A DNA stretch of 64,000 nt from Mantamonas sphyraenae STR306 (GCA_026936335.1 JAPMXV010000027.1:62001-126000); one strand, 5' to 3'. Shown: positions 614 through 53,276, counted from the first letter of the stretch. The notes: generated by a model not told the origin, from the letters alone. Made by a program: numbers and translations.

Positions 614-1710
614 TCATTGGTCCTTCTTCGCTGTGGCCGAGTCGGCGTCGTCCACAGCAGCGGGAGCCGTGGAGGTGGAGGTGGAGGTGGAAGGGGTGGG
701 AACAGGGCTGCGGTTGCCAAAGAGGCGGCCGAGCACAATGCGGTTGAAGAGAGTGGAGACGTCAAAGATGTGAAGTCGAGCGGGGAGGGCGCGGTGGTGC
801 TCCTTGAGCTTGCCTGGCGTGGCGTAGGCTGCCAGTACAATGAACACGGGAAATACAATGGCGTAGAAGCCATCGCTGACAAAGGTGGGGAAGAAATAGG
901 AGAAGGCGGTGCAGGGCAAGCCGAACCCCAGAAAGTACTCCCAGCGCTTTTCGATGTATCGGATGCGCCTCTCAAAGGTCCACATTTGTGCAGACCACAG
1001 GTATTCGAAGCTGTAGTAGGCGTAAAGGTAGGAAAAGAGGAGAAAGGCCAGCAGTGAGCCCAGGCGGGGGATAAAGCCGACGACAAAGACCTGCACGAGA
1101 TAGCCGATTACGACCATCATTCGGTAAATCTCGCCGCTGAGCATATCGCGTACGCTGTGTGTGTGGAGCAGGGCGGGAAGAGGGGCATGGGAGGGGCATG
1201 TGGGATGCGCTGTGTGAGCGTGTGTGACGTCATTTTTGGACGGTAGAACGAGGCCAAGGCACACACGTACGACAGGTAGGCCTCTGTGGGTTTGTCGTAC
1301 ATGTGGGTGTACGTCTCATTGGCAATCTCTTGGTAGAACTGGGTGTTGAGCACAAAGCTGAGGATGTACACGGGCAACACCCAGAAGATGGTGAAGAGGA
1401 GGTGGAAGGTAGAGTCAAACACGGCGGCGGCACGCTCCTGATTGGCAAGCGAAAGAATCCAGTGCATGGCAGGGATGACCACGAGGCGCGCCAAGGCCAT
1501 ACTGCCGAGAAAGATGACGCCGTTGAGGAGGATGCAGCGCAGAAAGAGAAACTTGAGCTTGTGATGGTCTCGCAGCAACTCGACCAGCTTGCCAAAGTTG
1601 AGGGCGTCGCTTAGGCCATTTCCGAGCAGGGTGAGGTGGAGTTTGAGGCGGTACGGAAGTGTGTAGGTTGTGGTCTTGCGCGGGGGCGCAGGATCCACGT
1701 GATCTGCCAT
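614..1710 (-). CDS. EI24: EI24 (etoposide-induced 2.4 / PIG8) family multi-pass ER membrane protein; 2 exons (1710-1271, 1154-614)
   Basis: Motifs CILLNGVIFLGS, FWVLPVYILSFVLNTQFYQEIA, YAYYSFEYLW, RIRYIEKRWEYFLGFGLP. Intron 1270-1155 (GTACGT...CACAG, phase 2) joins ORFs 1117-1878 and 614-1264. Confidence 0.85.
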
Positions 1711-1836: not shown

Positions 1837-4800
1837 ATGGGCTGTGGACAGAGCACAAGCAAAAGCAACAAGACGCACCCGGAGAACGGAGGCGGCGCAG
1901 GGGCGTCGTCGTCCGACGGCCTGCAGAAGCCCAGCGGAGTCACACGGGACAGCGGGGCGGCACGTGGAACGTCACAGTCACAGGATGGCTCGACTCCATC
2001 CAACACCTCTGTGGATTCGATCTCACAAAGCATGCGTGGCCACACGCTCTCTCAAGATTCACCACCCAGCGGACACAGCAACAACCACGGGAAGAAGGTG
2101 CTTCAGGCCACACTGGCAGACGACGGCAACCCTAGCATTGTGTTGCCCAGCCTGGGTCCGTTGGATCCGCGCAACAGCTCGGACAGCCACGGCCGGTCGA
2201 GCGGACAGGCCAACGGCTCGCCCGGCTACGATTTCTCGCATCTGGGCGCAACACTGATGGGCGCCAACGCAGCGGACAAGGTGAGTGTGGGGCAGAGTAC
2301 GGGTCGATGTGCATGCAAACACACACACACAGGTCTGTGCGTGTGTGTGGCTCGTGAGAGTGTCAGCGTGTGCGCACGGCGGCTTTTGGCGAGGGATGGC
2401 CGTTTTGTGTGGTCCGTGCCTTTCGCGGCGCCCAACCGACTACTGACACGGAGCGATGGCCCTGCGCTCGCAGTTCCTGTCGCTCAAGAGCGGAGGATCG
2501 CTGGCGGACAGCAAGAACAACATCCAGGTGTGTGTGCGTGTTTGTCCTCCACGGGAATACGACGAAGCATCGTTCAACACAGGGTTGCTTTGCGCGTTCA
2601 TTCCTGCCGTCGACGCGAGCCTGCGCAGCACATCGCACAGCTCGCGCAATTCCATGTCGGGCACCCCCGTGGACCTGGTCTCTGCAGCCAGTGGCTCGGA
2701 TTCGCCCGTGAATGGGCCCGTGAGTGCCGGCGACGAACTGGTTCACTCGGCTTTGTACTTAACCAACCCGGCCAAGGAGTCGACTGTGTCGTACGCGTTT
2801 GACAACTGCTTCTGGACGGGCCAAAGCAACGCATCGGAGAACAAACACATGTACCGGGCCAAGGTGGCCAACGCAGACACCACGGCTCACGCGCAAATGT
2901 GTGCGCAGTTGAGCAAGCGGCTGTTGACAGAGTATGTGCACGGGTACAACGTGTCCCTGGTCACGTACGGCTCTTCAAAGACGGGCAAGTCCATGTCGCT
3001 GTTTGGCATGTCGCAGGGAGAGCCCTCACCACGCATAAGCGTGGGCCAACTTGCACATCTGCTTCCCAGCGACAATGAGGCGTTGCTGGATGCAGGGCGT
3101 GCATATGGCGTGCTGCAGCACTTTGTGCATGGCTTGTTTGCAGTCACAGACTCGGAAACGCGCGTGCTGGTCTCCATTTTCCAGGTGCTCGACGACAAGG
3201 CGGTGGATCTCATGAGTCCGTCGTCGCCACCTGCGCAATTCCACAGCAACCACCTCACATCGCACGAATACACTGGCCAGACCATTGTCGGGCTGACAGA
3301 GTCACGCGTCCGGTCGCCAGACCACATGCACGAGCTGATTGTGCAGGCGCAGCAGGTGCGAGCTGTGTACAACGCAGACCTGGCAACCCCGAGCCATGCT
3401 GCTTCTGTGTTTGTCAAGTTGAACATCCACGGCAGCGAACGCAGCACACAGGCCATGTTTGCAGACCTGGGCAGCTCGGATGCAGTGTACAGCACGCGGC
3501 AGGCGTTTCAGATGTCGCACGGCACAGCGCCGATCACAGGCATTCCCGCGGTGCGCAACGTGGTGCGTGCTCTGGCCAAGGTCAAAAACTCACACAAGAA
3601 GATTGCCATCCCTTACAACGACTCGATGCTCACCTTTTTGCTGAAGCAGGCGTTGGGAGGCAACAGCAAAACTGTGTGGCTGGCTGCCATCTCGCCGTCG
3701 GCTGAGGACTACACCGAGACTCACTCGACACTACAGTACGCCAACCAGATCAAAAAGATTGTCAATAACCCCGTGGCGCCCACTGAGGTGCCCGAACCCA
3801 TGGGTCTGCACGCTCTGGCCGATTCGCTCAAGGAACGCATGGAGAAAATCGACGACCAGCAGTCGTATCGCGATCTGCAAACCAAGGCCATGTTTTACGA
3901 GTCGGTGGCCTCGTCGCTGGAGAGTTCCTTGGACACTCTGGACAAGCTGACCCAGGCCGTGGCAAGGCAGCGAGCCACCTTTTTGCAGGTGGCAGGCATC
4001 GATGTGCCCTGCGACGATGCTGTGCTCGCGCTCTCCAACGCACGCGTGGCACTTGTCAACCTGCACCCGGACGCGTCGCTGAGCGAAGTGTTGCACTTCC
4101 GTCTGAACATGGGCGTCACCGTGCTGGGACTGGAGGACCCCGAGCGAGAGAAGCGGGTTCGATCCAACAGGAAGCCATCGCGCTCGCATGTGTCCAAGGT
4201 GGCACAGCTGGACGTGAGCTCGGGAGACAAGAGCAGTGAGGGCAAGCGTGTACGCGGAGCGGTCGAACGCATCCCGCTCACCGGCGCAGACATTGCGTAC
4301 AACCACGCGCTGCTGGAGCGACGCATCCGAGCGGGCCATTACCGCGGCGAGGACGATCGATTCCACTCGCCCGATGAGCAGTTGTCCATCTACCCGTTGG
4401 ACGGACAGGTGTATGTCAACGGCGTTCGCATTGGCGGATGGACACGTCTTCGGCCGTATGATCGCATTATGGTGGGCATGACGCACTTTTTCCGAGTGGA
4501 GATCACCGAGGACTCGCAAGGAGGCAACGACGAAGGGTCAAAGGCGTCCTCCTCCTCCTCGTCCAAACACTCGTCACTTGTGGAGCAGGTTGAGCAGCAG
4601 CTGTTGCGGCGCACAGACAGCGAAGGAGTGTGGGATGCCCAAAACAACGAGGTCCACATGGACGACTCGCTGGGTCAGCTGCCAGACGAGGCGCTGTTCA
4701 ATATTCTCGGACGCTTGAGTGCAGGCGAGCTGATGGGCTTGTTTCCGCTAAACTCGCGCTTCCAACGCGTTGTGTGCCCACGCTACACACGCGTGGTGGC

Positions 4801-7800
4801 CGGCGATTCACGTCTGGTCACCGTCAGGTTTGCCTTGCGCGAGCTGCTGAGCAAGCAACAGTTTCAAGGCGTGCAGATGCCGAGCTTGCTGGAAAACACA
4901 AACGTGGGTGCGTCGTCGTCGTCGTCTTCGTCGTCGATGTCATCCTCATCGTCGTCCTCATCAAGCAGCCGTTCGCGTAACCAATCTTCCAATCACACAC
5001 TGAGCACAGATCCAGTGCACGAGGTACCGTGGCTGCTTCTGAACGACGTGTGGGCAGACGGAGACGACGATGTGCTGTGGTCATCGTACGAGCGCAAACT
5101 GTTGCACATCAACGTCAAGACGATGCACCAGCAGCTGAACGTTCTGCGACAAAAGAGGCTGCTGTACGGAGCAGACCCGCTGTCGCCCTTTAGTGTGCAG
5201 ATCATGCAGAAGCTGAAGGAGGTGAAGGACAAGTTTGGTCCGTTTGAAAAGCAGTGGCCGAGGTTTCGGGCAAAGGAGATGAGTGAACGGCTTGCGTTGG
5301 AGCGCGAGTTGATGTGCACCTTGCCGGCTGTGTTTGCAGGCTCGCAAATGGCCCAGCGCATGGACAAACACCTCAATAGCAGCTACTACGCACAGTTTGC
5401 GCTTGTGGGCACTCGTCGTACCCTCAAAATCAGCCGCGAGGCTCTGAAGGCAGGCATCTCGGGAGACGACAGTGCGGCCGTGTTGAGGGAACACGTTTCA
5501 CAGCTGTGCTCCACTGGCAGCTGGTTCGACCTGCACGTGCGAGCCACACGCAACTTTGTCAACCGCAGCGCAGATTGGCAGGTGGGCGAATTCTTGCTGG
5601 CCATGGACGCGGTGCGAACGCAGTACCACGAGTATTTGGCCGGGCTTCACGGTGTGGCCAAGAACAAGCGGCAACTGCGACAAGCCAACGACTCATCCAG
5701 CAACGGCAACGGGTCGTCGTCGTCGTCGTCGTCATCGTCGTCTCTCTCTACAGAATCGGACCCACTGTATGTGGCGCCAACCACGACACGCGTGGCGGAG
5801 ACGGCCGTATCGTTGATGGCCATTTCACATCTGCTGGACGTGGACCACACCAAGGCTGGCGTAGAGCTGTTGGGTTTTGACGACCGTTCGTACGGCGTCT
5901 TGCATGTGCGCGTGGTGCCTGTGGTCTCGAAGGAGCTGGAGATGATTGAGGATCCCACAGATCTGGTGGGCTATCCCATGCGCATCGAGGTGCACATCAA
6001 CAAAGCGCAGCGACTGCCAAAGGACCTGCGCAACCGCAGGGTGTATCTGGAGTACCGGTTTGGGGAGAGCACACAGTATGCCATGCAACGCGTGGAGCCC
6101 GTGTCGCGCATCGAGGACGGGCTCGTGATTTTCGATCACCGGTACACGCTGCACATTGACACGGTGACCACCGAGGTGCTGGCATACCTGCAAACCGAAT
6201 TTCTGACGATCACACTTCACGTGAGGGAAGCTGTCGTGTCGCAGAAGCCCGCGCTTGACCTGCTCCAACAACGCCAGGCCATTGCGTCGCCAAAGGCACG
6301 CTCGACGGCGATCATCGACAAGGTGCACGCCAAGTCGACGGAACGGCTGAACGGAGCGTTGACGTCGCGAAAGCGAGCAAGCAGTGTGTATGGACTACAT
6401 GGCTCGAGCAAGGCGGTGGACAAGCAGACAGGCTTTGTGGTGTTGGATCTGGAGAACTTGCAACGGAACCGGGCGGTGGACACGAGTCAAGACGAAGGTC
6501 AGGGATGGTTTGTGAATGACAACGGACAAAACATGGGCAGGGTGCACATGCGCATTGTGCCCGTCGAAGACGACAACGAAGAGTTGGCGGCCGAGGTGGA
6601 CTTTGCCGAGCAGCTGCTGGGTCTGACGCTTCACTACCGCATCGAAATTGTGGCATTGACCGATCTGCACGAATCGCTTGTGGGCCACCCGCTGCTCATC
6701 CGGTTTGCATTCCATACGCTGGGAAACGTGATTTCGGCTCCGTTCCTCGGCTCTACGGGTCGCATCGACATCAAGAAGCGCACCGTATTGAGTTTGTTTA
6801 TTGTGGCTCCAGACTTTATCAACTTTCTAAAGGGGTCGTTGCGCGTGTCGCTGATGCTCTGTCCAAGCAAAATGGATGTGATTGAGGAGGCGATCGCAGC
6901 GGCAGCCGTGGCAGCAGAGTCTGGACCGACGATTTCGCCCAGTGCGAGCAGCGAACGGGTGCCGGGCAAACCCAAGTCGTCGTTTCTGGGGGACGCACCA
7001 CAACTGACAGGGTCGCCCAGCCTTGTGCGTGGGCGTGACGACGTGGCCCCTGTGTCGGACAGGCTGGATGACTCACCCACAGCACATGCAATCCGAGAAC
7101 GCGAAGCAAAGCGAAACGCAGACCGAGAAAGGGTGCGGCAGGAACAGGAAGAGAAGCAGCGGCAGGCAGAGGCCGAGAGGAAACGAGCAGCTGAGCGCGA
7201 GCGACAGAGACTGGCGGAGGAAGAGCGCGTGCGTGCTGCGGAGCAACAACGTGAAGCCGAGCGGGTTCGCAAGCAACAGGAGGAGCAGGCGGAGCGTGAT
7301 CGTGTCGAGAAGGAGCGCGTGCGAGCCGAGCAAGAGCGGCTTAGGCTGGCGGCAGAGGCAGCCATTGGCGACGATGTGGGATCCAGTGCAGACTTGGACG
7401 GTGGCATCGGATCTTCGCTGCGACAGGTGAAGGACGTGGAGGAGGAAGACGCGGTGATGATGATCGAAACGCCAACACCGCGAGGGTCGGGCCCAAACAC
7501 ACTGGCAGCGCCGTCCGTTGACGACGGCGAGGAGGAAGACGTGGGTCTGACTGTGGAAGACTTGCCGGAGGAGCTGCCAAGCCCGGCAGAAATCGAAGAG
7601 AACAACCGCAAGAAGCGGATGGCAACTCTGCGCAAAACGCCGCGCAACGCAGGAGCGCCCGAGGCCATGCGCGGTGTGCTTGTGGGCTTTGCGATGATGG
7701 ACCTCTTTGAATTGTCGTACAACATCGAAAGTACGGCGGTGTTGCCTGTGATGGCGGCGGGCAAGGACGGCATGGCAACACAGGAGCGTGTGGGCTCGCT

Positions 7801-10324
7801 GGCAGCCAGGATTGTGCCTGTGTCCGAGACCGGGTTGTCTGCCGACGAGGACATCAGTCTGTTGGTGGACGACTCTGAGGAGCTGTTGGGCCGGCGCACG
7901 GACTTGATCATGCACTTGTACGGACTGGGCGAGATGTCGGAGAAGTTGCAGCCGCACCAACTGTACGTGCAGTACCAGTTCCACGGGGACAAGAAAGTGC
8001 AGAGCACTGCAATGAGCCAAGTCGGAGTCAACAGCTCGCTGAGTGCCGAGTTGTCGGTGACCCACGAGCTGGATTACGAACGTGTGCTGACGTTCCATCT
8101 GGTGAACCAGAAACTGTTGCAGTTCTACTCACGACCTCTGATGTTCAAGGTGTACCGGGACGGCGAGCCCGAAGCGGAGCCGATGAAACTGGCGCCAGCG
8201 CTTCCGACGCTGCTGCCAGCGACGCCTGGAACGGCCGGCGTGGCACTTGCAATGCCGCTGTCAGGCAGCTCAGAGGGCAATGGAGGCTCGGCACGCAAGC
8301 GACGCGGGTCGATTGTGGTGCGCGAGAGCAGTGTGCTGGACATTGGTGTGCCGCAAGGAGTGCAGGTACGAACGGAGGACAGGCGGAAGCTTGGTGTGGC
8401 TCAGGTAGAACTGAGCATTCTGGGCCATATGTTGCCGCTGGAGATGGGGGACCACGGCGTGGCTGTGTTTGACACGAGTGGCTTTGAAATCGGAACGCTG
8501 CACCTGAGCATCACGCCGCTGAACTCGTTTGGCAAGAAGGATGAATCGCTGTTCTTTGACGAGCCATCAGAGATGCTTGGACAAGCAGTGAACCTGCTGG
8601 TGGAGGTTCAGGCGCTGAAGGGAGTGTCGTCGCGGCTGAGTGGCAGCCAGCTCTTCCTGGAATACCGATTCTTTGGGGACGAGCGCCCAGTGTCGACGCA
8701 ATTCTTCACAGTGATGGAGAACGGCAAGGCCAAGGTGGAGTACAAGCGCATCTTCCACATGGACAAAGCGTCGCAGGACTACATCGAGTATGTGTGTGGC
8801 AGCACGCTGCAGCTGACGCTGTGGCGTTACATGGACGGGTCGGAAGAGGTTGTGGGCAGGCTGGTGCGAGCGAGCAGCAAGGAAGAGGTGGAGAAGCTGG
8901 TGCAAGCGGTGCCAGATGGATACAACTACGCAGGCAGTGGGCAGATGAGCATGGTGGGACTGAGCTTTGGCCTGGACATCGAGGAGGAGGTGAGCGTGGT
9001 GAACCTGGACGGAAAAGTGCTGCTTCGGGCAAAAATGGCAGTAGTGCCGGTCAAGGCAGACTCGGAGGAACAGGACGAGGACGTGATGGTGGAAGACGAG
9101 TCGGAGCTGGTGGGGATGAACATGACGCTGCGGTTCAAGCTGCACGACGTGGTGTTGGAGGCGCAGAAGCGAGAGTTTTACGTGGAGTTTGCATTCTTTT
9201 CATTTGGAAGCATGCACAGCAAGGTGTTTGAGCCCGAGGCTTCGTCATCATCAGCCATGGAGCAAGTGTGGAAGGTGCGGGTGGACAAGGTGACAAACAA
9301 CTTTGTAGAATACCTGCAGACGGGCAATCTGCGTGTGCAACTGTTTGAGAAGCCTTTGGAGGCAGCAACGCCTGTGCGCGGATCGCTGGCGAGTGTGGGC
9401 GGCGGAGACAGGCTGCTGGACGTGGGCGGGAGCGGTACCAGCGCGGTGCGTCTGAGCGGATCGAAGCAAAGCACAACACTTGCGTCGTCGTTGAGGCAAG
9501 AGATGACGCTGGACGATCAGATGAGCAAGGAGGGATGGGAGCTGATTGGTCTGTGTCCACTGTACCTGGACGCACTTTCGTTCAACATCGAAATCGAAAG
9601 TACGGGGGGATTCCGAATTATCAACTCGTCAGGAGACGAGGTGGGCAACCTGGAGGTGGAAATCACCCCGGAGGACGACGAGCTGGTGGTGGATGACCCG
9701 TCGGAACTGCTTGGCAAAGAGCTGCACTTTCTGCTGACAGTGTTTGGCATGAACAGCCTGAGCAAAGAGGTGACGGAGGAGTTCAACGAGTATGCCGTGC
9801 GGTACACGTTCTTTGGAGACACAGAGGCGCATTGGACGGGAGCGAGCCATGTGTCGTCGAGCAAAGACTTGGGATTCCCGCGGTTCAACTACGACCACGA
9901 ACTGGACATCGAGAGCGTGGACGGCTCGTTCCTGGAGTTTACAAGCACGCCGATGAACATGGAAGTGTACGGACGCAAGGTGGATGAGGTACGAGTGCAG
10001 GACGCGTACTACGACGAAGAGGACGAGGAAGAGGAGGAAGCGGAGGAGCATGATGGGGAGCCACACCTGAGCCCAAGCAAGGGTAAAGGGCCGAGAAGGT
10101 TGTCTGTGAGCGCAAGTGCCCCCTTGCTGGCTGGGCTGGAAGACGGGAGCAGTGGGCGAGGGAGCGGGCGTTCGGTGCGCTTTTCGGACCGCAACATGCG
10201 AGGCAGCACGTCGTTGGCAGACGGACAGTCGCAACATCGCGGATCGCAAGGATCTGCAGGCAGTGGAGGAAACAAGCGGAAGGGCAAACGCAGGCGCGGA
10301 GCGAAACGGCGCGGCCCGCGCTGA
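1837..10324 (+). CDS. Giant kinesin-3-related protein: MGC acylation motif, degenerate motor, FHA, F-box, coiled coil and six C2-like repeats; 2 exons (1837-2280, 2474-10324)
   Basis: Motor motifs VCVRV, YAFDNCFW, GYNVSLVTYGSSKTGKS, IPYNDSMLTFLLKQALGGNSKT, ETHSTLQYA. Kinesin-3 pre-FHA motif LVNLHPDASLSEVLHFRL and FHA VYVNG..I.....L...DRIMVG..HFFR. F-box-like SLGQLPDEALFNILGRL. Intron 2281-2473 (GTGAGT...TACTGAC...CGCAG, phase 0). Confidence 0.85.
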
Positions 10325-10352: not shown

Positions 10353-11054
10353 ATGAGTGACAGCGAGCGTGTGGAGGGAGACGAGAAACAGGCAATGGAA
10401 GAGGATGTAGGCAGTGGCGCAATTGGTGAAAGTGATGGTGTGGAGGTGGCGGAGGGAGAAGACCAATCAAGCACGACCGAGGAGGAACGCGAGGCCGTGG
10501 AACAAAATGAGGATGATTCGGGGAAGGAGCAGTTGGGGGAAACGGAAAAACAAGACGGGAAAGATGCTTCAGGGGCATCGGGGGCCGAAGAGGAAGTGAG
10601 TGTGCAGGTAGAGGCGGGAGGAGAAGAGGGCGTTGCAGCGACGATTGGGGAAGGGATCCCATACGCCGAAGCTGCAGAGTTGGACAGCGAGGGGATGTCA
10701 GAGTTGTTTCTGGATCCACGCAACAGTGCACTGGCGGCAGAGCTTGTGCTGCAGATGGAAGCGGAGAGCAAGGCTCTGAGCCGGGAATTGGCAAGCCTGT
10801 TGTCGTCGCTGCGCGGGTCGCTGAACGCAGAGATGCAGGTGACGAACGAACACCTGACGGTGTACAAAGAGAGCGCAGAGAGGACGAGCGACTGCGTGAA
10901 CGAGGCCATCCAGAGTGCGCACCTGTTTGTGAGCAACGTGGTTCAGATGCACAAGGACATGGCGCCGATTCAGGAGATGGCAGCCAAGATCAAGCAGATC
11001 CGGAAGACTCTAGACGCGTTGGAGGTGCACGTGAACAAAATGAAACGGGCTTGA
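10353..11054 (+). CDS. BORCS6: BLOC-1-related complex subunit 6 (BORCS6/lyspersin)-like coiled-coil protein with acidic N-terminus
   Basis: C-terminal helix LLSSLRGSL...YKESAERTSDCVNEAI...MAPIQEMAAKIKQIRKTLDALE resembles the BORCS6 C-terminus. First in-frame ATG after the kinesin stop is at 10353. Confidence 0.65.
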   Translation: MSDSERVEGDEKQAMEEDVGSGAIGESDGVEVAEGEDQSSTTEEEREAVEQNEDDSGKEQLGETEKQDGKDASGASGAEEEVSVQVEAGGEEGVAATIGEGIPYAEAAELDSEGMSELFLDPRNSALAAELVLQMEAESKALSRELASLLSSLRGSLNAEMQVTNEHLTVYKESAERTSDCVNEAIQSAHLFVSNVVQMHKDMAPIQEMAAKIKQIRKTLDALEVHVNKMKRA

Positions 11055-46226: not shown

Positions 46227-47295
46227 ACGCGAGGCACGGTGGGCCGTCGACAACACGTGGCGGCGGATTGTCCAAAAGATGGTACTTCTCTGTCATTCGG
46301 ATGTTGCGCCAGCGATTGAAGAGTGTTTGGACAGTGGTGATGATCCAGTAGATTGCGATCAGGGAGCCAGCGCCGTAGACGGTGATTTCCGTGAGCTTGA
46401 CCAGGCAGAAACAGGCAATGAATACAGTCACGGAGATTCCCATGTGAAGCCAGTGGGAACACAGGCCAATGACAGCCGAAGCAGCGGCCGCCATGAAGTG
46501 CGTTTTGGGTTGCAGGCGCCCCTCGACGTGGAGAATCCACATGCCAATCTGGCCTGCGATTTGGACAGCAAAGAGAATAAAGGTGAAAAACTCCCGATAC
46601 TGCGCTCCAGGGATGTAGGCGAGGCCAATGAGGCCACAGGCGATGGCGAGGACGATCAAGAGGGCGACAAACATCGAGGTGTAGGAGTCGAGGAAAACAA
46701 AGTAGCGGTCTGCCAGCACCGCCACCACCAAATACACAGAAAACTTGATGCCATACTCCCTGATGACATCTGCCCACGGGTCGAGGAACACCAGGAGGAC
46801 GAAAGAGAACAGGAACGGCCACCACGACCCGCCGTAGTTGAGGGCGTAGTACACAGACGCGTTGGCCACCATGCAATGCACGACTGAGCGCACAAGGTTG
46901 TTGATCTCAGAGGGGTACAGAGGAAGCGTTTTGTCAAAGGGAGACTCGTGCACAGAGATGGCCTCCTGGTGCGCCTTGGCAAGGCGGGCAAGATATTGTG
47001 GAATCGCCGCTTTGCCGCGCAGCCGTTTGTCAATGCCGACAGCTTCCAAATGAGGACTTTTCTGTGCTGCCACGCGTTGCATCTGCTTGAGGATGAGTTC
47101 CCAGGCAGGGCTGGCGTCCGTGATGCGGTGAAGGCGGTGACATGTGGCTCCCAGCTTGGCCAGCGAGCACGGGTGGTGTCGCAGGTGCATGCAAATGCGT
47201 GCCAGCACCTCGTCGGGAAGAAAAACCAGATGCGAGCCATCGAAATCCTGGTCCGACCACTCCTCCGACAGGGTGTGCTGCAGGGATGGCTTCAT
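46216..47295 (-). CDS. F-box + multi-pass membrane domain protein, paralogue 1
   Basis: EEWSDQD...LVFLPDEVLARICMHL...SLAKLGATCHRLHRI....AW, followed by about 7-8 hydrophobic segments. Confidence 0.8.
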   Translation of the reverse strand: MKPSLQHTLSEEWSDQDFDGSHLVFLPDEVLARICMHLRHHPCSLAKLGATCHRLHRITDASPAWELILKQMQRVAAQKSPHLEAVGIDKRLRGKAAIPQYLARLAKAHQEAISVHESPFDKTLPLYPSEINNLVRSVVHCMVANASVYYALNYGGSWWPFLFSFVLLVFLDPWADVIREYGIKFSVYLVVAVLADRYFVFLDSYTSMFVALLIVLAIACGLIGLAYIPGAQYREFFTFILFAVQIAGQIGMWILHVEGRLQPKTHFMAAAASAVIGLCSHWLHMGISVTVFIACFCLVKLTEITVYGAGSLIAIYWIITTVQTLFNRWRNIRMTEKYHLLDNPPPRVVDGPPCLAFTA

Positions 47296-47413
47296 TCCCG
47301 GTTTGTGTCTCGTGGCAGTCGGTTCTCCTGGTGCCGCTGGGGTGCATTCCAATTCTCCATGTTGGACCAGATATCTGGTCGTCATTGCCAAAAGAGCTCT
47401 TTTCATTTCCCCG

Positions 47414-48475
47414 CTAGAACACCATGCACGGACGCTCGTCCAGGAAGCGGGGGTCCGGGAAAATTTCATCCGCACGCTTGGTCTCCTTTGCCATGTCATC
47501 GAGACGTCCCCGCCCGTGCTTCATCACAGACCAGAACGCATAGACTCCGGGAGCAGAAACAAGCAGATGAGGCTGATTGAAACACAGGCTGATGAGCATG
47601 GCGGCAGAGGAGGCCACCAAAGCGATGAGGCCCAGCCACCACTTGCGCAGGTATGCTGCGCCCCCACACATGGTCTGGATCACCAGTGACAAGGGTCTCC
47701 ACACCAAGCCATACACAGTGAGGATCTCCAGGTAGAACGCCAGTGCAGAGACGCCGCAAATCACCAACCAATCCCACAAGTTGTCCAGCCTGTTGGTTTG
47801 CTTCCATTCCGCGCCCACAACGCCAAGTGCACCCAGCAGCGCAATGGTCACACTCACAAGCAGCATGTCCCTGCTGCCGAGCGACGGAAAGCTGCAATGG
47901 GCCAGGAGCGAGACGGCAACAAACGCCCCTGGAACGACAGTGAAGTCCCTGACAGAGACTCGAAACGGAGAGGTGGTAGCCAAGAGGATGGGAGAGGCGA
48001 CCAAGGGCCAATACGACCCGTTTTCTGTGCTGGCGAAATGGACGGCCCAGTTTGCGCCGAGAAAGTGGAGAAGGGAGTGCAGGAGCCACACCACATCCCT
48101 CGCAAAGAGAGGCAAGGGAACCGTGAACACATATTCGGGGCTCTGTACAGTGTACTGCTGTCGGAGGCGAGCACAGGCTTCGGCAATGGTGCGGCGCACC
48201 TGGTCTGCGCAAGGTTTGCCCCGCACTCGCGGCCGCTGGATGTGTTCACTCTGCAATTCCGGGTGCACGCGTGTCACATGCACATACTGCTCTGCAATGG
48301 CTTCCCATGCCTCACTTTCGTCCACGATGCGATGCAGACGCCGACAAGTGGCTCCCAAGCGGGCGAGCGAGATTGGATGCCGTTCCAAGTGGCTGCACAC
48401 ATTCAGCAGCACCTCTTCTGGCAGAAACACAAACGCAGACGTACGCTCGTCTTGCAATGCCCACTCGTTCTCCAT
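47414..48475 (-). CDS. F-box + multi-pass membrane domain protein, paralogue 2
   Basis: MENEWALQD...FVFLPEEVLLNVCSHL...SLARLGATCRRLHRIV...EAW. TM region starts HFLGANWAVHFASTENGSYWPL. Confidence 0.8.
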   Translation of the reverse strand: MENEWALQDERTSAFVFLPEEVLLNVCSHLERHPISLARLGATCRRLHRIVDESEAWEAIAEQYVHVTRVHPELQSEHIQRPRVRGKPCADQVRRTIAEACARLRQQYTVQSPEYVFTVPLPLFARDVVWLLHSLLHFLGANWAVHFASTENGSYWPLVASPILLATTSPFRVSVRDFTVVPGAFVAVSLLAHCSFPSLGSRDMLLVSVTIALLGALGVVGAEWKQTNRLDNLWDWLVICGVSALAFYLEILTVYGLVWRPLSLVIQTMCGGAAYLRKWWLGLIALVASSAAMLISLCFNQPHLLVSAPGVYAFWSVMKHGRGRLDDMAKETKRADEIFPDPRFLDERPCMVF

Positions 48476-48567
48476 GGGGTGTGTAAAACCCAGACTGGAC
48501 CCGAGTCGAGGGATGTTCTTTTGTTGTTGTTTCGCTGCCCCTGCTCTCGCATGCCACACACTCTCTC

Positions 48568-49707
48568 TCAGTCTCTCTTTTTGCGAAGCGACTTTGCACG
48601 CTCGGAACGTCGCTTGCGCAACCATTCGTGATTGTCTGTGGTGGCCTTGACGTAGGGCGGCTCGTCGGAAAACTCGGGCATGGGCAGGAGTTCCAGGAGC
48701 TTCTCTGCGTGTGCTTGCCACCTGCGCCGCCTCTCCCACCACCAGTGAGCCAAATAGTACGCAAAGACGGCATGAGGCACGGTGGTCAGAGCATACATGG
48801 CCTGGCCGGAGAAGTAGGTTGGCGAGAAACCAATGACAAAACCGAGTGCAGCAAAGGCCACCGACCACCATGTGATCCATAGGGCGGGAAGGAGCAGGGC
48901 CACAAACATCCATCGATGGGTGAAGGCACTGATGACATCGTAGGCCTCCAGCACCCACAGGAGCAGGTTGACGACAAAGAGCGCCGACACGGTGTGCCCC
49001 TCCTGCTTCTCCTTCCATTGATTGCCCTCTGCGTGCGCCAACTCGACAAAGAACCACAGAATGACTTGGAGCACAAAGAGTAGGAGCACCAGAGGCACGA
49101 CGTGAGCGGCCACGCGTGCGTAGGTGTCGAGCAACCAGCCCAGCAGGGCATAGACTGCCAGTGCGGATAGTTGGTTGACCCCAAGGGGCAATACGTCGTA
49201 CATGGGCACCAGGATGACCAGTGACGTCACCAGAGGCCACCAGCTGCCATCCCAGGCCGTGGCCCACCACACAGCCGCGTTCCCGGCCACAAAGTGCGCC
49301 AGCATCGTCCACGGCATGTGTTTGTGTTCGTTGCTCTGTATCACGTCAGGCACGCCGCCAGCCTGGTCCCTCAGTCCGTTCTTGCATCGCTCCCTGATTT
49401 CGTTGCGTTCCCGCTCCCGAAGCCGTCGCAACGCCTCCCGCCTCTCTTCCGCCCCTGCGCGCCCTCTGGTGCGCACCTGCAGTCCCGACGGATCCATACT
49501 CAATCCACATGTTTCGTAAGCCCGTGACACAGAGTCCCACGCTTCGCTCTGTGCAACCACACGCCGCAGCCGTCGGCAAGTTCCGCCGAATCGCTCCAAC
49601 GACATGGGCGAGCACCGCAGCTGCATGCACACCTGCTCCAGCACCTCGTCGGGTAGAAACACCAACGCACACGTCTCCTCGTCCTGCTCCGCCCAATCCT
49701 CCTCCAT
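48568..49707 (-). CDS. F-box + multi-pass membrane domain protein, paralogue 3
   Basis: MEEDWAEQD...LVFLPDEVLEQVCMQL...SLERFGGTCRRLRRVV...EAW. TM region starts HFVAGNAAVWWATAWDGSWWPL. Confidence 0.8.
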   Translation of the reverse strand: MEEDWAEQDEETCALVFLPDEVLEQVCMQLRCSPMSLERFGGTCRRLRRVVAQSEAWDSVSRAYETCGLSMDPSGLQVRTRGRAGAEERREALRRLRERERNEIRERCKNGLRDQAGGVPDVIQSNEHKHMPWTMLAHFVAGNAAVWWATAWDGSWWPLVTSLVILVPMYDVLPLGVNQLSALAVYALLGWLLDTYARVAAHVVPLVLLLFVLQVILWFFVELAHAEGNQWKEKQEGHTVSALFVVNLLLWVLEAYDVISAFTHRWMFVALLLPALWITWWSVAFAALGFVIGFSPTYFSGQAMYALTTVPHAVFAYYLAHWWWERRRRWQAHAEKLLELLPMPEFSDEPPYVKATTDNHEWLRKRRSERAKSLRKKRD

Positions 49708-49756
49708 CACACGGTGTTTGCAGCGGGGCGTTTGTTTCGGTTTGTAGTGCCACACA

Positions 49757-51430
49757 TCACGCGTCGTCCCCATTCAGCATCCTCTTCAACACTGCCTGCA
49801 ACACCACTCCGTTGGCCCTTCCGCCACTCTTGGCCATCACCTTGCCCACAAAGAAGCCAAACAGCTTGTGCTTGCCCTGCCTGTACTCTTGCAGCTTGTC
49901 GTTGTGGTCTGCCAGCACCTGCTCGCACCACACCTGCAACTCGCCCTCGTCACTCACTTGCTCCATGCCCATCTGCTTCACCAGCGCACGCACGTCTTCC
50001 ACCTTTCCTGCCTGCTGCCCGACGCACATTTCCTCCAACACCAACTTGACCTGCTTGCCACTGATCACCTCCTCCTCCCACAACGACACCAGCTGTGCCA
50101 TGCGTTTGCTGTCCACAGGCGACGCAGCCAAATCCAGCATTTCTGCGTTCAGATGTCCCATCAGCTCGCTCATGATCAGGTTGTTGACGCGTGTGGCGTC
50201 TGCCTCTGGCACCGCTGCCATCACCTCTTCAAAGTACTCGCTGGCATGGTTCTCGTTCACCAACACACGTGCGCTGTGTGTGCTCAGTCCATACTGCGCC
50301 TCCAGCCGTGCACGCCGTGCTTCGGGCAATTCCGGCAGCGTGGCACGCACCCGCTCCACCCACTCTGGGCCAATGTCCAGCGGAAGCAGATCCGGTTCGG
50401 GGAAGAATCGATAATCCGCCGCACTCTCCTTGTCACGCATGGGTGCGGTGACCATGCGCACGGCGTCGAACAGCAACGTCTGTTGGGCCACCTCGCCTCC
50501 TGCCTCCAACACCTCGATTTGTCGTGCACACTCGTACTCAATGGCCTTTTGCACGTGTCGGATGCTGTTCAGATTCTTGATTTCCGTCCGTGTTCCAAAC
50601 GGCGCCCCCGGCCGTCGCACACTCACGTTGACGTCGCAACGCAACGACCCCTTTTCCATGTCCCCGTCACAGGTTCCCACTGCACGCAACAGGGCCTGCA
50701 CACCCTTTACATACGCCCCTGCTTCTGCGGCTGTGCGCATGTCCGCTTCCGACACGAGTTCCATCAGCGCCATGCCCGCTCGGTTGAGATCAATAAATGT
50801 AAAGTGGTCGTGTTGCTCGTGCATGCTCTTGCCACTGTCCTGCTCCAGGCATACATGCGATACACGCACACGCTTCTCCCGCGTGTCTTGGGGTCGCTTG
50901 CCTGCCTGTACACTCACCTGCACCGCCCCGCCGAGCAACACGGGCGTGCGCGCCTGCGTGATCTGGTACCCCTGCGGCAGATCCACGTAAAAGTAGTGTT
51001 TCCGGTCAAAGTACGACCGTGGCGACACAGTGCTCCCCAGAGCCAGTCCCGTCTTGATGGCTGCCTCCACACACGCGCTATTGGCCACGGGCAGAGTGCC
51101 GGGGAGTGCCATGTCCACGCGCGACACTCGCGAGTTGGGCAGCGCCGCAAAGGCCGTCTCGGTGTCCGAGAACAGCTTGGAATGTGCCTTCACCTGTGCG
51201 TGGATTTCAATCCCAATCACCGGTTCCCACTCTCCCGTGCTTCCCGCCACCAAGTGTCCTCCGCGTGCATAGAACGCAGCCGTGTCCGCATGCTCGCTCC
51301 TCTCGTCCAGCTCCTGCGGCACCAGCGTGTGTGCTGCTGCTGTCTGGTCACACTCCCTGTGCCCTCTCGCCGTCCACTTCCACCTCGACACCGACGCCTG
51401 CCGTGCCACACCGCCCGACCGGCCAAACAT
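49757..51430 (-). CDS. GATB: Mitochondrial Glu-tRNA(Gln) amidotransferase subunit B (GatB/PET112)
   Basis: VIGIEIHAQ, DMALPGTLP, FDRKHYFYVDLPQGYQITQ, LEQDSGKS, LRCDVNVSV, RTEIKNLNS, DYRFFPEPDL. Arg-rich presequence. Confidence 0.95.
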   Translation of the reverse strand: MFGRSGGVARQASVSRWKWTARGHRECDQTAAAHTLVPQELDERSEHADTAAFYARGGHLVAGSTGEWEPVIGIEIHAQVKAHSKLFSDTETAFAALPNSRVSRVDMALPGTLPVANSACVEAAIKTGLALGSTVSPRSYFDRKHYFYVDLPQGYQITQARTPVLLGGAVQVSVQAGKRPQDTREKRVRVSHVCLEQDSGKSMHEQHDHFTFIDLNRAGMALMELVSEADMRTAAEAGAYVKGVQALLRAVGTCDGDMEKGSLRCDVNVSVRRPGAPFGTRTEIKNLNSIRHVQKAIEYECARQIEVLEAGGEVAQQTLLFDAVRMVTAPMRDKESAADYRFFPEPDLLPLDIGPEWVERVRATLPELPEARRARLEAQYGLSTHSARVLVNENHASEYFEEVMAAVPEADATRVNNLIMSELMGHLNAEMLDLAASPVDSKRMAQLVSLWEEEVISGKQVKLVLEEMCVGQQAGKVEDVRALVKQMGMEQVSDEGELQVWCEQVLADHNDKLQEYRQGKHKLFGFFVGKVMAKSGGRANGVVLQAVLKRMLNGDDA

Positions 51431-51471
51431 GGAGAGGTTGCTGTGTGCTGAGCAGCGCGGCAGCCCGACCA
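51431..51471. promoter_or_regulatory. 41-nt spacer between divergent GatB and Nup58-like start codons
   Basis: GatB has no other in-frame Met before its conserved domain. Nup58-like ATG is at 51472. Inferred from geometry only. Confidence 0.4.
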
Positions 51472-53175
51472 ATGACCTCACGCTTTGGCCGCTCTCGCAC
51501 CAGCGGCAGCTCGTCATCGCGCTCCAGCGGAAGCACGCGCTCGGGGTTTGGCAGCCGCAGCAGCAGGGACAAGGACAAGGATAAGGACAAGGACAAGGAC
51601 GACAGCGACGACGAGAAGAAGAGCAGCAGCACGCGCCGAGCCGGCGGCTTTGGCGCGCGCCGCTCCTCCCTGGGCAGGGACAAAGACAAGGACAAAGACA
51701 AGGATAAGGACGGCAGCGACGATGAAGGCGACAAGAAAAAGACGGGCAGCAGCCGGTGGGGATCGCGACGCTCTTCCCTAGGCTCCTCCTCCAGGAAGGA
51801 GAGCAGCGACGTCAAACGAGGCGTCACAAACCACAATGTGCAGATGACCACCAAGTATGAGGACCTACCCGACGACTGGAAGGATTCCATCCGCGACTTT
51901 GAGTAGGTTTGGTTGGTGGCCCCTCCTGCCTGTGGCCTGTGTGCAGTGCGTGGAGCTCCCAGCTTTGCTCCACGTCCGGCCTGATCCGCTCACCCACAGA
52001 CCACACCCGCGCGCACCCGCAGCTACGAGGTGTCCAAGTTTCGTATTGCCCTCGCAGACATTGACAAGGAGGAGACGACGCCCGAGAACGTGCCCACCAT
52101 GCTTATGGACGTCAGCAAGGACACCGACGCAAAGATGAAGGTGCGTCGTGCATTTTTTGGCGCCCAAGTTCGCCCCTCCTCACACGGACGCGCTGTATCC
52201 CCCTCCCCACACCACCACACTCACTCACTCCTTCACTCGTATGCCGGTGCATGCCATGGCTCTGTCCCCACACAGAAACTGACGTCCATCCTGAATGCCA
52301 TCACCATGGAACGCAGCGCGATCACCGCGCTGCACAAGGAAGTGACGCAGGAGCTGCGCAACGCAGACATTGTGCGACGGGAGCTGGAGTATTTGTCAAA
52401 CAGCAGCAGTCTGGCAGCCACGTACCTGTCGTCGAACCATCTGCCCACGCCGTACTTCTGGTCGCTGCTGGAGCGATTTGAGAAGCGGCTGGAGGAGTAT
52501 GCAAAGACGATTGCGGAGCTCAGCGAGCTGTTGGAGCCTGTGGAGCACGAGGCATTCACACCGCAAATGTTGGAGAAGATTGTGCACAACGAACACGAGT
52601 ACTTTCTGGCCACGGCATCACTGGTGGGTACAGTGCACGAGGAGGTGCAGAATGCCAAGGAGCACTTTATCAAGCATGTCAAACCCAAAGCAGGCTTCTT
52701 TGACGACGAAGAGCAACGCACACAGCGCTTGGAACAGTTCCGCACCAAACAAAAGGACATGCTGTCACAGGAGCGCTATCTGCAGAACCTGATCTTCCCC
52801 AACGGCACGCCGGCCGAGGAGCGCCAACGTGAGGAGGAGGAGAAGGCGTACAGCGGACGCAGCGGCAGTCGATGGGGGGCGTCGCGGTCGTCTGCAGGGG
52901 GCAGTCGCTTCGGCGCATCGCGTGCAAGTCGCTCGGGCAGCAGCAGCGGCAGCAGCGGCAGCGGCAGCCGCTTTGGACGCTCGCGGGCTGACGAGAAGAA
53001 GGATGAGGAGGAAGGAGGCAGCAGACGCAGTTCCCTCTCCAGGCGGACCACCCGTTCCAGCAGTGACTCCAGTGCAGGACGCCGCTCAAACCTGCGCGTC
53101 GACACGGGCAACCGCACGGGCACGTTCAGCCGAGGCTCCAGCCGTACCAGTGGCAGCAGCCGCTTTGGGCGTTGA
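51472..53175 (+). CDS. NUP58: Nucleoporin Nup58/Nup49-like central-channel protein with atypical charged FG/WG tails; 3 exons (51472-51902, 52023-52140, 52276-53175)
   Basis: Coiled-coil core TKYEDLPDDWKDSIRDF..., PTPYFWSLLERFEKRLEEYAKTIAEL, TPQMLEKIV....EYFLATASLVGTVHEEVQNAKEHF resembles the Nup58 pattern. FG motifs on both sides. Introns 51903-52022 and 52141-52275 are canonical. Confidence 0.7.
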
Positions 53176-53276
53176 ACCAACCACTGGCAGTCTTGTGGAG
53201 AATGGGAGTGTGGGCCAGCGCAGCGCGCGGTGCAATCCAAAACGAAAACAAAGCTCCCTTTCAACGATCGTCGCCT

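What the first reader, a model, noticed from the sequence alone, without database searches (positions are those of the whole stretch)
1837..10324. Membrane-tethered kinesin-3 derivative carrying an F-box: candidate microtubule-bound SCF ligase scaffold
Seen: after removing intron 2281-2473, the protein begins MGCGQS. It then has a kinesin-like motor (~2520-3770), a kinesin-3-type FHA (~4050-4500), an F-box-like segment SLGQLPDEALFNILGRLSAGELMGLFPLNSRFQRVV (~4667-4775), a charged coiled coil, six C2-like modules and a C-terminal RSVRF motif. Known: G2/C3 N-termini are typical myristoylation/palmitoylation signals and target many protist proteins to the flagellar membrane; F-boxes bind Skp1; RVxF motifs dock PP1. 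I know of no characterised kinesin with an F-box. Inference: a scaffold linking membrane, microtubules and ubiquitination, loosely analogous to Costal2/KIF7 in Hedgehog signalling but with the ligase adaptor built in.
Basis: partly seen in the sequence, partly recalled or inferred. Interest (0 to 1): 0.8.

Follow-up and report, generated by a model that had tools for sequence, protein, structure and literature searches.

The report
Kinesin-3 pseudo-motor with F-box-like insert
A small marine flagellate (Mantamonas sphyraenae) has a giant kinesin-3-type gene whose motor has probably lost its ATPase, which carries a short insert resembling the F-box that docks ubiquitin-ligase machinery and six copies of a known kinesin-3 tail domain; the gene and most domains are confirmed, but the ligase link and the membrane anchor remain predictions.

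Summary
The gene is real. A stop-free 2622-codon ORF (2456-10324, +) has a collinear 49-51% identical orthologue in the Mantamonas plastica transcriptome.

Confirmed:
- Kinesin motor (Pfam E 5.5e-40) with a Walker A-type P-loop but non-canonical switch I/II, in both species.
- Kinesin-3 FHA (KIF1A/KIF1B structures, E 4e-7).
- Six tail modules, in both species.

Corrected:
- The modules are not C2 domains. They are the kinesin-3 tail beta-sandwich ("MATH") solved in C. elegans KLP-6 (7WRG, E 3.9e-18).
- The "coiled coil" is an E/R-rich stretch that the orthologue lacks.
- RSVRF is a chance-level, unconserved match.

F-box-like segment (res 738-784): below Pfam cut-offs (15-18 bits). However, it is the top Pfam family in both species, scores 91% in a profile-profile comparison with this genome's own F-boxes (controls 16% or less), and is a conserved island in an ~85-aa insert between FHA and CC2. 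Skp1 binding is untested; both AlphaFold models were too poor to use.

Exon 1 (MGCGQS): supported by codon bias and splice signals, with no RNA evidence.

A second Mantamonas kinesin elsewhere in the genome has a Pfam-significant U-box plus F-box.

Verdict: a new variant of kinesin-3; the ubiquitin-scaffold reading is plausible but unproven. This stretch was also noted by other readers of the scan.

The parts
1837..2280 (+). Candidate exon 1: MGCGQSTSKSNK... followed by a low-complexity S/G/N-rich leader (148 codons). Predicted N-myristoylation (G2) and palmitoylation (C3) site.
   Evidence: Translation. In-frame codon log-odds +0.236 per codon and GC3 0.72, like the kinesin ORF (+0.27, 0.75); all five other frames are negative. 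It is the first start codon after an in-frame stop. No RNA evidence.
2281..2473 (+). Candidate intron (193 nt): AAG|GTGAGT donor, TACTGAC branch-like motif at 2441-2447, CAG| acceptor at 2471-2473. It contains the alternative start ATG at 2456.
   Evidence: Sequence. No codon periodicity (GC by codon position 0.66/0.61/0.59). The TGA at 2444-2446 closes the kinesin frame upstream, so 2473 is the only in-frame acceptor I could find by reading.
2474..10324 (+). Exon 2, the body of the gene. The open frame runs from ATG 2456; the stop is at 10322-10324.
   Evidence: Collinear with M. plastica transcriptome proteins P0001 and P0032.
2519..3772 (+). Divergent kinesin motor domain. P-loop GSSKTGKS (2969-2992); switch I ATPSH instead of SSRSH (within 3371-3412); switch II DLGSSD instead of DLAGSE (3464-3481); K-rich L12 and PYNDS...GGNSKT (3578-3673).
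   Evidence: Pfam PF00225 E 5.5e-40, residues 124-435. Best solved relatives are KIF13B and KLP-6 at E ~2e-23. Motifs read from the alignments. DLGSSD is identical in M. plastica P0032, whose switch I is further degraded.
4049..4516 (+). Kinesin-3-type FHA domain, split by a ~35-aa basic insert. The canonical Gly-Arg is Gly-Leu in both species.
   Evidence: KIF1A 4EGX E 4.3e-7, KIF1B 2EH0 E 3.9e-6; profile E 1.8e-8; Pfam FHA only E 0.051. The other four hits of the exhaustive search are kinesin-3 FHA regions.
4667..4807 (+). F-box-like segment, SLGQLPDEALFNILGRLSAGELMGL-(8 aa)-RVVCPRYTRVVAGD. It lies in an ~85-90 aa insert (about 4517-4822) between the FHA and the CC2 motif.
   Evidence: Pfam F-box and F-box-like are the top two families but sub-threshold: E 0.02, 15 bits here and E 0.003, 17.9 bits in M. 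plastica. An HMM of 20 F-boxes from this genome finds this site as the best match in both full proteins, p ~1e-4. hhalign gives 91%, E 1e-6, score 32, against at most 5.7% for 55 other windows, at most 16% (score 9.7 +/- 2.0) for 150 column shuffles, and 1.2% reversed. Identity to the orthologue is 63% here against 23-33% upstream. All language-model neighbours are F-box families.
4823..4864 (+). CC2-like motif VRFALRELLSKQQF. It resembles the kinesin-3 'W/F-x-F-A-x-x-E-L' motif that normally follows the FHA within ~15-25 residues.
   Evidence: By eye against P0002, P0004 and P0005. Conserved in M. plastica. Role of CC2 from PMC9314371.
5024..5644 (+). Conserved, predicted helical region in the position of the kinesin-3 MBS domain. 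Homology to MBS was not detectable.
   Evidence: Up to 80-83% identity to M. plastica. No PDB sequence match. AlphaFold model of low confidence.
5792..6358 (+). Tail module 1 (kinesin-3 'MATH'-type beta-sandwich).
   Evidence: Profile of the six modules against KLP-6 7WRG residues 700-842, E 3.9e-18. Domain identity from PMC9314371. Boundaries.
6428..6970 (+). Tail module 2.
7088..7363 (+). E/R/A-rich charged stretch (E 24, R 23, A 17 of 96 residues), more like an ER/K single helix or spacer than a coiled coil. Not conserved in M. plastica.
7682..8254 (+). Tail module 3.
8393..8905 (+). Tail module 4.
8933..9460 (+). Tail module 5.
9545..10072 (+). Tail module 6.
10169..10183 (+). RSVRF, an RVxF-pattern match judged to be chance.
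   Evidence: It is the single match in 2622 aa, where my rough estimate is about three by chance. It lies in a poorly aligned stretch (17% identity, 50% gaps) of the M. plastica tail, which shows no RVxF-type motif.
10271..10321 (+). Polybasic C-terminus (NKRKGKRRRGAKRRGPR). A K/R/G-rich end is also present in M. plastica.

Best explanation
This is an intact gene, known so far only from Mantamonas, of the kinesin-3 family. Its layout is: motor, neck/CC1, FHA, an insert carrying an F-box-derived domain, CC2, a helical region, six tandem kinesin-3 'MATH'-type beta-sandwich domains, and a polybasic end.

Shown:
- The domain homologies.
- The six-fold tail in two species.
- The non-canonical switch I (ATPSH) and switch II (DLGSSD). 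Switch II is identical in both species.
- The statistically specific F-box resemblance.

Inferred:
- The motor no longer hydrolyses ATP normally, so the protein acts as a scaffold rather than a transporter.
- Exon 1 is spliced on and gives an N-myristoylated, palmitoylated membrane anchor.
- The F-box-like domain docks Skp1, either to bring SCF ubiquitin-ligase activity to a membrane-cytoskeleton site or as a non-SCF Skp1 module. It sits at the FHA-CC2 hinge that controls kinesin-3 self-folding in KLP-6.
- The six beta-sandwich modules and the basic tail provide multivalent partner or lipid binding.
For: - ORF and orthologue.
- Motor: Pfam E 5.5e-40. The nearest solved motors are kinesin-3 KIF13B and KLP-6.
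- Degenerate switch motifs, conserved or further decayed in M. plastica P0032.
- FHA: KIF1A and KIF1B structures.
- Tail modules: KLP-6 MATH domain at E 3.9e-18; six copies in both species.
- F-box: top Pfam family in both species; own-genome F-box HMM p ~1e-4 at the same site in both; hhalign 91% against controls of 16% or less; a conservation island; language-model neighbours all F-box.
- The genome has Skp1, cullins and at least 70 above-threshold F-boxes.
- A second Mantamonas kinesin carries a Pfam-significant U-box plus F-box, conserved in M. plastica.
- Exon 1: codon bias, flat intron, consensus splice signals. NMT is present in the genome.
Against: - The F-box scores only 15-18 bits, against Pfam cut-offs of 20.5 and 24.3. 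Only helices 1-2 align without an 8-residue insert.
- The segment is absent from the 94 genome-wide PF12937 matches.
- A PDB profile search gave no significant F-box hit; FBXO2 scored E 0.86.
- AlphaFold models had pLDDT 52 and 41, and Foldseek found nothing.
All M. plastica isoforms are 5'-truncated, so the N-terminus is unconfirmed in a second species.
- ATG 2456 would give a normal kinesin-3 N-terminus without exon 1.
- The L11/alpha4 microtubule-binding motif is strongly diverged, so microtubule binding itself is uncertain.
Confidence: 0.45

Rival explanations
1. This is a divergent kinesin-3 pseudo-motor or structural linker with no ubiquitin connection. The F-box-like segment is a relic of an F-box, or a convergent LPxE-helix motif, that now serves only as a structural or regulatory element at the FHA-CC2 hinge and does not bind Skp1.
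For: - Pfam scores are below cut-off.
- The second half aligns only with an 8-aa insert.
- The conserved Glu of LPxE is Arg in M. plastica.
- The segment was not picked up in the genome-wide F-box scan.
- There is no structural support.
- In KLP-6 the FHA-CC2 junction is an intramolecular packing site.
Against: - The profile-profile score is far above all controls.
- F-box is the top family in both orthologues by two unrelated methods.
- The hydrophobic F-box core positions are conserved across ~50% overall divergence.
- This lineage demonstrably fuses F-boxes to kinesins.
Confidence: 0.35
2. The gene starts at ATG 2456, and 1837-2280 is not part of it. The protein would then be cytosolic, not acylated, and the MGCGQS opening irrelevant. 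This rival concerns only the N-terminus and is compatible with either reading of the F-box.
For: - ATG 2456 lies 20 codons before beta-strand 1, a typical kinesin-3 N-terminus.
- No transcript evidence is available.
- GTRAGT sites are not enriched in the window.
Against: - 1837-2280 has coding-type codon bias in exactly the frame that joins the kinesin frame, while the proposed intron has none.
- Read without splicing, that frame runs on to 2802 across the motor-coding region in another frame.
- The donor, branch and acceptor signals are consensus-like and uniquely in phase.
- The divergent EI24-like gene starts at 1710, leaving a compact 126-nt inter-ATG gap.
Confidence: 0.22
3. It is an active, if unusual, transport kinesin-3. 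The altered switch motifs still support ATP turnover, and the tail modules bind vesicle cargo as in KIF1A and KIF13.
For: - The Walker A pattern GxxxxGKS is intact.
- The K-rich L12 and the alpha5/alpha6 motifs are retained.
- The altered switch II is conserved rather than decaying.
Against: - The switch I Ser-Ser-Arg and the switch II Gly and Glu are all replaced. From established kinesin enzymology, these residues are needed for hydrolysis.
- Switch I is further eroded in M. plastica.
- L11/alpha4 is non-canonical.
Confidence: 0.1

Closest known systems
Kinesin-3 family, especially C. elegans KLP-6 (PDB 7WRG), KIF13B and KIF1A
   Same: Motor followed by neck/CC1, FHA, a CC2 motif, and the tail beta-sandwich that Wang et al. 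2022 named the MATH domain. The nearest solved motors and FHA domains are all kinesin-3.
   Different: - Switch I and II are non-canonical.
- The FHA is split by a basic insert and lacks the Gly-Arg.
- An ~85-aa insert with an F-box-like domain lies between FHA and CC2.
- There are six MATH-type modules instead of one.
- The MBS is not detectable by sequence.
- No PH, CAP-Gly or other Pfam-detectable cargo domain was found.
- There is a putative acylated N-terminal exon.
F-box domain proteins (Pfam PF00646 and PF12937; SCF substrate receptors)
   Same: L-P-x-E, hydrophobic helix 1-2 pattern, V-C-x-R-aromatic helix 3 pattern, ~45-55 aa. Profile-profile probability 91% against 20 F-boxes of the same genome.
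   Different: Below Pfam gathering scores, with an 8-residue insert before helix 3. It is embedded in the middle of a kinesin. Skp1 binding is untested.
Mantamonas kinesin-U-box-F-box gene (G000 contig C30, locus L023; M. plastica P0031)
   Same: A kinesin motor and an F-box in one polypeptide, in the same organism, conserved between two Mantamonas species.
   Different: That gene has a canonical motor (GQTGSGKT, SSRSH, DLAGSE), is short (~630 aa), carries a U-box as well, and its F-box passes Pfam's cut-off. It has no FHA or MATH-type modules and is not a paralogue of the segment studied here.
Predicted F-box plus kinesin proteins catalogued by Wickstead et al. 2010 (Monosiga brevicollis 38064, F-BOX-KISc; Batrachochytrium BDEG_00161, FBOX-WD40x3-KISc-Nuclease)
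   Same: An F-box and a kinesin motor annotated in one predicted protein.
   Different: The F-box is N-terminal to the motor, and the kinesin groups differ (X12 and kinesin-4/10). They are single-species, uncharacterised gene models that may be fusion artefacts.
Costal2/KIF7 (from my own knowledge)
   Same: A kinesin-derived protein with impaired motility, used as a signalling scaffold.
   Different: Kinesin-4 family, no F-box, no acylation. This is an analogy only.

Membership tests
Kinesin superfamily | Kinesin motor domain above the Pfam gathering score | tested here: met
   PF00225 E 5.5e-40, 137.8 bits against a cut-off of 29.3.
Kinesin superfamily (catalytically competent motor) | Canonical P-loop GxxxxGK[ST], switch I SSRSH and switch II DLAGSE | tested here: not met
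   The P-loop pattern is kept (GSSKTGKS). Switch I is ATPSH and switch II is DLGSSD. M. plastica has SDPNY and DLGSSD.
Kinesin-3 | FHA domain C-terminal to the neck/CC1 | tested here: met
   KIF1A 4EGX E 4.3e-7, KIF1B 2EH0 E 3.9e-6; profile E 1.8e-8.
Kinesin-3 | Tail 'MATH' beta-sandwich as in KLP-6, KIF1A and KIF13 | tested here: met
   Module profile against 7WRG residues 700-842, E 3.9e-18. Domain definition from PMC9314371.
Kinesin-3 | MBS domain between CC2 and MATH | tested here: inconclusive
   No sequence match to KIF13B or KLP-6 MBS. The model's confidence was too low to compare folds.
Kinesin-3 | Motor-domain phylogeny places it in the kinesin-3 clade | not tested
   Only ranked similarity is available: KIF13B and KLP-6 score best, with kinesin-8 KIF18A close behind.
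F-box (PF00646 / PF12937) | Score above the Pfam gathering threshold | tested here: not met
   15.0-15.1 bits here and 16.0-17.9 bits in M. plastica, against cut-offs of 24.3 and 20.5. Not listed in the genome-wide scan.
F-box (PF00646 / PF12937) | Profile-level similarity over the three-helix motif (LPxE...VCxxW) | tested here: met
   hhalign 91%, E 1e-6. Controls: at most 5.7% for other windows, at most 16% for shuffles, 1.2% reversed. Alignment shown.
F-box (PF00646 / PF12937) | Three-helix F-box fold | tested here: inconclusive
   The AlphaFold model predicts three short helices in the right places, but pLDDT is 52. Foldseek found no match.
F-box (PF00646 / PF12937) | Binds Skp1 | not testable with these tools
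   Skp1 genes are present. No complex prediction or experiment was available.
C2 domain | Match to a C2 family profile | tested here: not met
   Best hits are RPGRIP1-type C2 at E 0.07-0.15, in two of six modules only. The modules match the kinesin-3 MATH-type domain instead.
Dual-acylated (myristoyl/palmitoyl) N-terminus | Met-Gly start with Cys3 and Ser6 on the mature mRNA; NMT present in the organism | tested here: inconclusive
   MGCGQS is read directly, and NMT is in the genome. The exon's inclusion rests on codon bias and splice signals only, and acylation itself is untested.
PP1-docking RVxF motif | [RK]-x(0,1)-[VI]-{P}-[FW], conserved in orthologues | tested here: not met
   One match, at or below my rough chance estimate, in an unconserved stretch of the M. 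plastica tail that shows no RVxF-type motif.

The most novel reading that the evidence does not exclude
Mantamonas has put ubiquitin-ligase docking modules directly onto kinesins. In this reading, this ATPase-dead, membrane-anchored kinesin-3 derivative recruits Skp1/SCF through an internal F-box placed at the autoinhibition hinge, and uses its six MATH-type modules as multivalent substrate or cargo receptors. The separate kinesin-U-box-F-box gene would be a second, motile version of the same idea. That would be a cytoskeleton-addressed ubiquitination system not described in any organism.
Probability: 0.3. Interest if true: 0.75.

Novelty: new variant of a known kind. Interest (0 to 1): 0.55.

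Why it matters
Kinesin-3 tails are usually cargo adaptors. A kinesin-3 with dead catalytic switches, six copies of the recently defined tail beta-sandwich and an inserted F-box would show that motor proteins can be rebuilt into fixed platforms for ubiquitin signalling.

It comes from a deep-branching lineage (CRuMs) near the base of Amorphea. Together with the clear kinesin-U-box-F-box gene in the same genome, it offers two testable cases of direct motor-ligase fusion.

If the F-box does not bind Skp1, the gene is still a useful natural experiment on the FHA-CC2 hinge and on repetition of the MATH-type domain.

Tried and rejected
- Structure: both AlphaFold jobs, each with a two-sequence alignment, gave low confidence (pLDDT 52 and 41). 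Foldseek on the first gave nothing. No structural claim is made.
- F-box against solved structures: the best F-box protein, FBXO2, scored only E 0.86.
- MBS domain: not detectable by sequence.
- Relatives: the word-index search and the exhaustive 1.84-billion-protein profile search found only the M. plastica orthologue plus ordinary kinesin-3 FHA hits. The motor search found no 5' fragment of the orthologue. The look-up of encoding contigs had no record. All three M. plastica isoforms are 5'-truncated.
- Paralogues: there is no paralogue of the F-box-like segment in the genome.
- Rejected readings: C2 identity of the modules; RVxF/PP1 docking; a conserved coiled coil.
- Splice-site enrichment: GTRAGT is not enriched in the window, so it is uninformative.
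- Literature: phrase searches for F-box or U-box kinesins returned nothing.
- Joined model: exon 1 and exon 2 were searched separately by reference. The joined protein was not built or searched.

Full report
**Source organism.** The window is G000 contig C27, 62,001-126,000. The assembly has 25,061,354 bases in 78 contigs, the longest 751,365. These figures match the published FALCON assembly of Mantamonas sphyraenae: 25.06 Mb, 78 contigs, longest 751,365 bp, 59.2% GC (PMC10492846). Earlier notes of this scan named the same organism. I take the identification as confirmed.

**The gene.** One open frame runs from 2456 to the TGA at 10322-10324: 2622 codons with no stop.
- The word-index search of 5.8 billion proteins found a single relative, P0001. 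It is an M. plastica transcriptome protein (EukProt EP00003).
- P0001 is collinear with this ORF from inside the motor to the C-terminus at 49-51% identity.
- An exhaustive profile search of 1.84 billion representatives, using the FHA-to-helical region, found only that orthologue plus four ordinary kinesin-3 proteins that match on the FHA.
- The gene is therefore real, conserved and expressed in a sister species, and so far seen only in Mantamonas.

**Motor.** Pfam Kinesin scores E 5.5e-40. The nearest solved motors are kinesin-3 KIF13B and KLP-6 (E ~2e-23), followed by KIF18A, KIF14 and KIF1A. Alignments show:
- the Walker A pattern retained (GSSKTGKS);
- switch I SSRSH replaced by ATPSH, with a 3-residue deletion;
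- switch II DLAGSE replaced by DLGSSD;
- the L11/alpha4 motif (LKEGxNINxSL) unrecognisable;
- PYRDS changed to PYNDS;
- a K-rich L12, GGNSKT and alpha6 kept.

The longer M. plastica isoform P0032 has the identical DLGSSD and an even more eroded switch I, SDPNY. The non-canonical state is therefore old and maintained. From established kinesin enzymology, loss of the switch I Arg/Ser and of the switch II Gly/Glu predicts little or no ATP hydrolysis. That is an inference, not a measurement, and microtubule binding is likewise untested.

**FHA.** The region 4049-4516 matches the solved FHA domains of KIF1A (4EGX, E 4.3e-7) and KIF1B (2EH0, E 3.9e-6) in two blocks separated by a basic insert of roughly 35 aa. 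The two-species profile gives E 1.8e-8. Pfam FHA alone is sub-threshold at E 0.051. The Gly-Arg of canonical phosphothreonine-binding FHA domains is Gly-Leu in both species, so phosphopeptide binding is doubtful.

**Tail modules.**
- Six units share a pattern (G-x-L-x-V-x-I-x-P ... D-P-x-E-L-L-G ... Y-x-F) and align at about 20% pairwise identity.
- Individually they give no Pfam hit better than E 0.07, to RPGRIP1-type C2 domains.
- Their profile hits chain A of 7WRG, residues 700-842, at E 3.9e-18.
- 7WRG is full-length C. elegans KLP-6. That stretch is the eight-stranded beta-sandwich its authors named the MATH domain and found conserved in KIF1A/B and KIF13A/B (PMC9314371).
- The modules are thus a known kinesin-3 tail domain, not C2.
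- The same HMM finds six copies in M. plastica too. In the M. sphyraenae genome it finds single copies at only two other loci, on C60 and C28; both also have kinesin-motor matches nearby.
- The six-fold repetition is the unusual feature.

**F-box-like segment.** In ordinary kinesin-3 proteins, the FHA's last strand (HxFRF) is followed within about 15-25 residues by the CC2 motif (W/F-x-F-A-x-x-E-L), as in P0002, P0004 and P0005. Here THFFRVEI and VRFALRELL are about 105 residues apart. The extra ~85-90 residues contain SLGQLPDEALFNILGRLSAGELMGLFPLNSRFQRVVCPRYTRVVAGD.

Evidence for an F-box:
1. On the isolated segment, the two Pfam F-box families are the top hits in M. sphyraenae (E 0.02, 15 bits) and independently in M. 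plastica (E 0.003, 17.9 bits, and E 0.01).
2. An HMM built from 20 bona fide F-boxes of this genome finds this site as the best match in each full-length orthologue, at p ~1e-4.
3. hhalign of the two-species segment against those F-boxes gives 91% probability, E 1e-6, score 32. It aligns helix 3 as RVVCPRYTRVV after an 8-residue insert. MAFFT produces the same alignment.
4. Controls for point 3: 55 other windows of the same protein pair reach at most 5.7%; 150 column shuffles reach at most 16%, with score 9.7 +/- 2.0; the reversed segment reaches 1.2%.
5. The segment is a conservation island: 63% identity against 23-33% in the 60 residues upstream and 43% downstream.
6. Language-model nearest neighbours are all F-box clusters for both species, at 0.92 and 0.93. 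The tool warns that such scores alone are weak evidence.

Evidence against:
- All Pfam scores are under the gathering cut-offs of 20.5 and 24.3 bits.
- The site is not among the 94 genome-wide PF12937 matches.
- The Glu of LPxE is Arg in M. plastica.
- A PDB profile search gave FBXO2 only E 0.86, behind chance hits.
- Both AlphaFold models were of low confidence, and Foldseek was empty.

My estimate is about 0.7 that the segment derives from an F-box and about 0.4-0.5 that it binds Skp1. The genome encodes Skp1, several cullins and more than 70 above-threshold F-boxes.

**Context that raises the prior.** I cross-referenced the genome-wide kinesin and F-box matches.
- On contig C30, one ORF contains the end of a canonical motor, a U-box (E 1.1e-17) and an F-box-like domain above Pfam's cut-off (E 2.3e-7, 30.9 bits).
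- It has an M. plastica orthologue with the same four Pfam domains (P0031). F-box-bearing kinesins therefore do exist in this lineage.
- On C52, an F-box plus MATH_2 protein lies immediately upstream of another kinesin gene.
- Literature phrase searches found no described F-box or U-box kinesin.
- Additional file 3 of Wickstead et al. 2010 does list two predicted proteins with an F-box and a kinesin motor: Monosiga 38064 and Batrachochytrium BDEG_00161. The bare combination has therefore been catalogued, though never characterised.

**N-terminal exon.**
- 1837-2280 reads MGCGQSTSKSNK....
- Its codon log-odds (+0.236 per codon) and GC3 (0.72) match the kinesin ORF. The other five frames are negative.
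- The proposed intron shows no periodicity.
- The intron has AAG|GTGAGT, TACTGAC 27 nt before the acceptor, and CAG|.
- A TGA at 2444-2446 closes the kinesin frame, so 2473 is the only in-phase acceptor I could find.
- Read unspliced, the exon-1 frame would run on to 2802 across the motor-coding region in another frame.
- A divergent EI24-like gene starts at 1710, leaving 126 nt between the two start codons, in keeping with this compact genome.
- MGCGQS fits the myristoylation pattern G-{EDRKHPFYW}-x-x-[STAGCN]-{P}, with Cys3 available for palmitoylation (pattern quoted from my own knowledge). NMT is present in the genome.
- Against: - I put exon-1 inclusion at about 0.75.

**Rejected details.**
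- RSVRF is the only RVxF-pattern match in the protein, where my rough estimate is about three by chance. It lies in an unconserved stretch of the M. plastica tail, which shows no RVxF-type motif.
- The E/R/A-rich stretch (7088-7363) is replaced by an acidic, Ser/Thr-rich stretch in M. plastica. It is best read as a spacer.
- The polybasic C-terminus is shared by both species.

**How it most likely works.**

Shown: a kinesin-3 backbone with non-canonical catalytic switches, an F-box-like insert at the FHA-CC2 junction, and a six-fold MATH-type tail.

Inferred: it is a scaffold rather than a transporter. It would be anchored to a membrane by N-terminal acylation and perhaps by the basic tail. 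It may hold on to microtubules through the pseudo-motor, and it may dock Skp1 through the insert.

In KLP-6, the CC2 helix packs on the FHA and bridges it to the MBS to build the autoinhibitory supramodule. An F-box placed immediately before CC2 could couple Skp1 binding to the folded or open state. This is speculation. Non-SCF Skp1/F-box complexes (Rcy1, Ctf13; from my own knowledge) are an alternative to a true SCF ligase.

**Verdict.** I rate it a new variant of kinesin-3 of moderate interest. Other first-stage notes of this scan cover the same stretch (the dead motor and the six-fold module), and I tested both here.

Noticed in passing
G000 contig C30, about 175,762-177,900, minus strand (locus L023:3263-5396): An intact kinesin gene with a canonical motor, a coiled coil, a U-box (Pfam E 1.1e-17) and an F-box-like domain above Pfam's cut-off (E 2.3e-7). 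The M. plastica orthologue P0031 has the same four Pfam domains. I found no description of a kinesin-U-box-F-box protein in the literature searched.
   Followed up: partly
G000 contig C52 (locus L024:494-2674 and 2767-6270, + strand): An F-box plus MATH_2 protein (726 aa) lies directly upstream, on the same strand, of a kinesin gene (1167 aa). This could be adjacent genes or one interrupted gene.
   Followed up: no
window 10353-11054 (+): A BORCS6 homologue (PF10157, E 3.8e-18) starts 28 nt after the kinesin stop codon. BORC is known (from my own knowledge) to couple lysosomes to kinesin-1 and kinesin-3, so the adjacency may or may not be meaningful.
   Followed up: no
window 1117-1710 (-): The first exon of an EI24-like membrane protein (PF07264, E 2.2e-6, just under the cut-off). 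It is divergent from the kinesin gene, with its ATG 126 nt from the kinesin's exon-1 ATG. The reading frame appears to run into an intron near 1200.
   Followed up: no
window 47101-53429 (G000 C27:109,101-115,429): Four above-threshold F-box-like matches cluster within ~6.3 kb of this window: three on the minus strand and one on the plus strand.
   Followed up: no
G000 C60:313,348-313,830 and C28:62,587-63,030: These are the only other copies of the kinesin-3 MATH-type tail module in the genome, one per locus. Both loci also have kinesin-motor matches nearby, so they are presumably the organism's conventional kinesin-3 genes.
   Followed up: no
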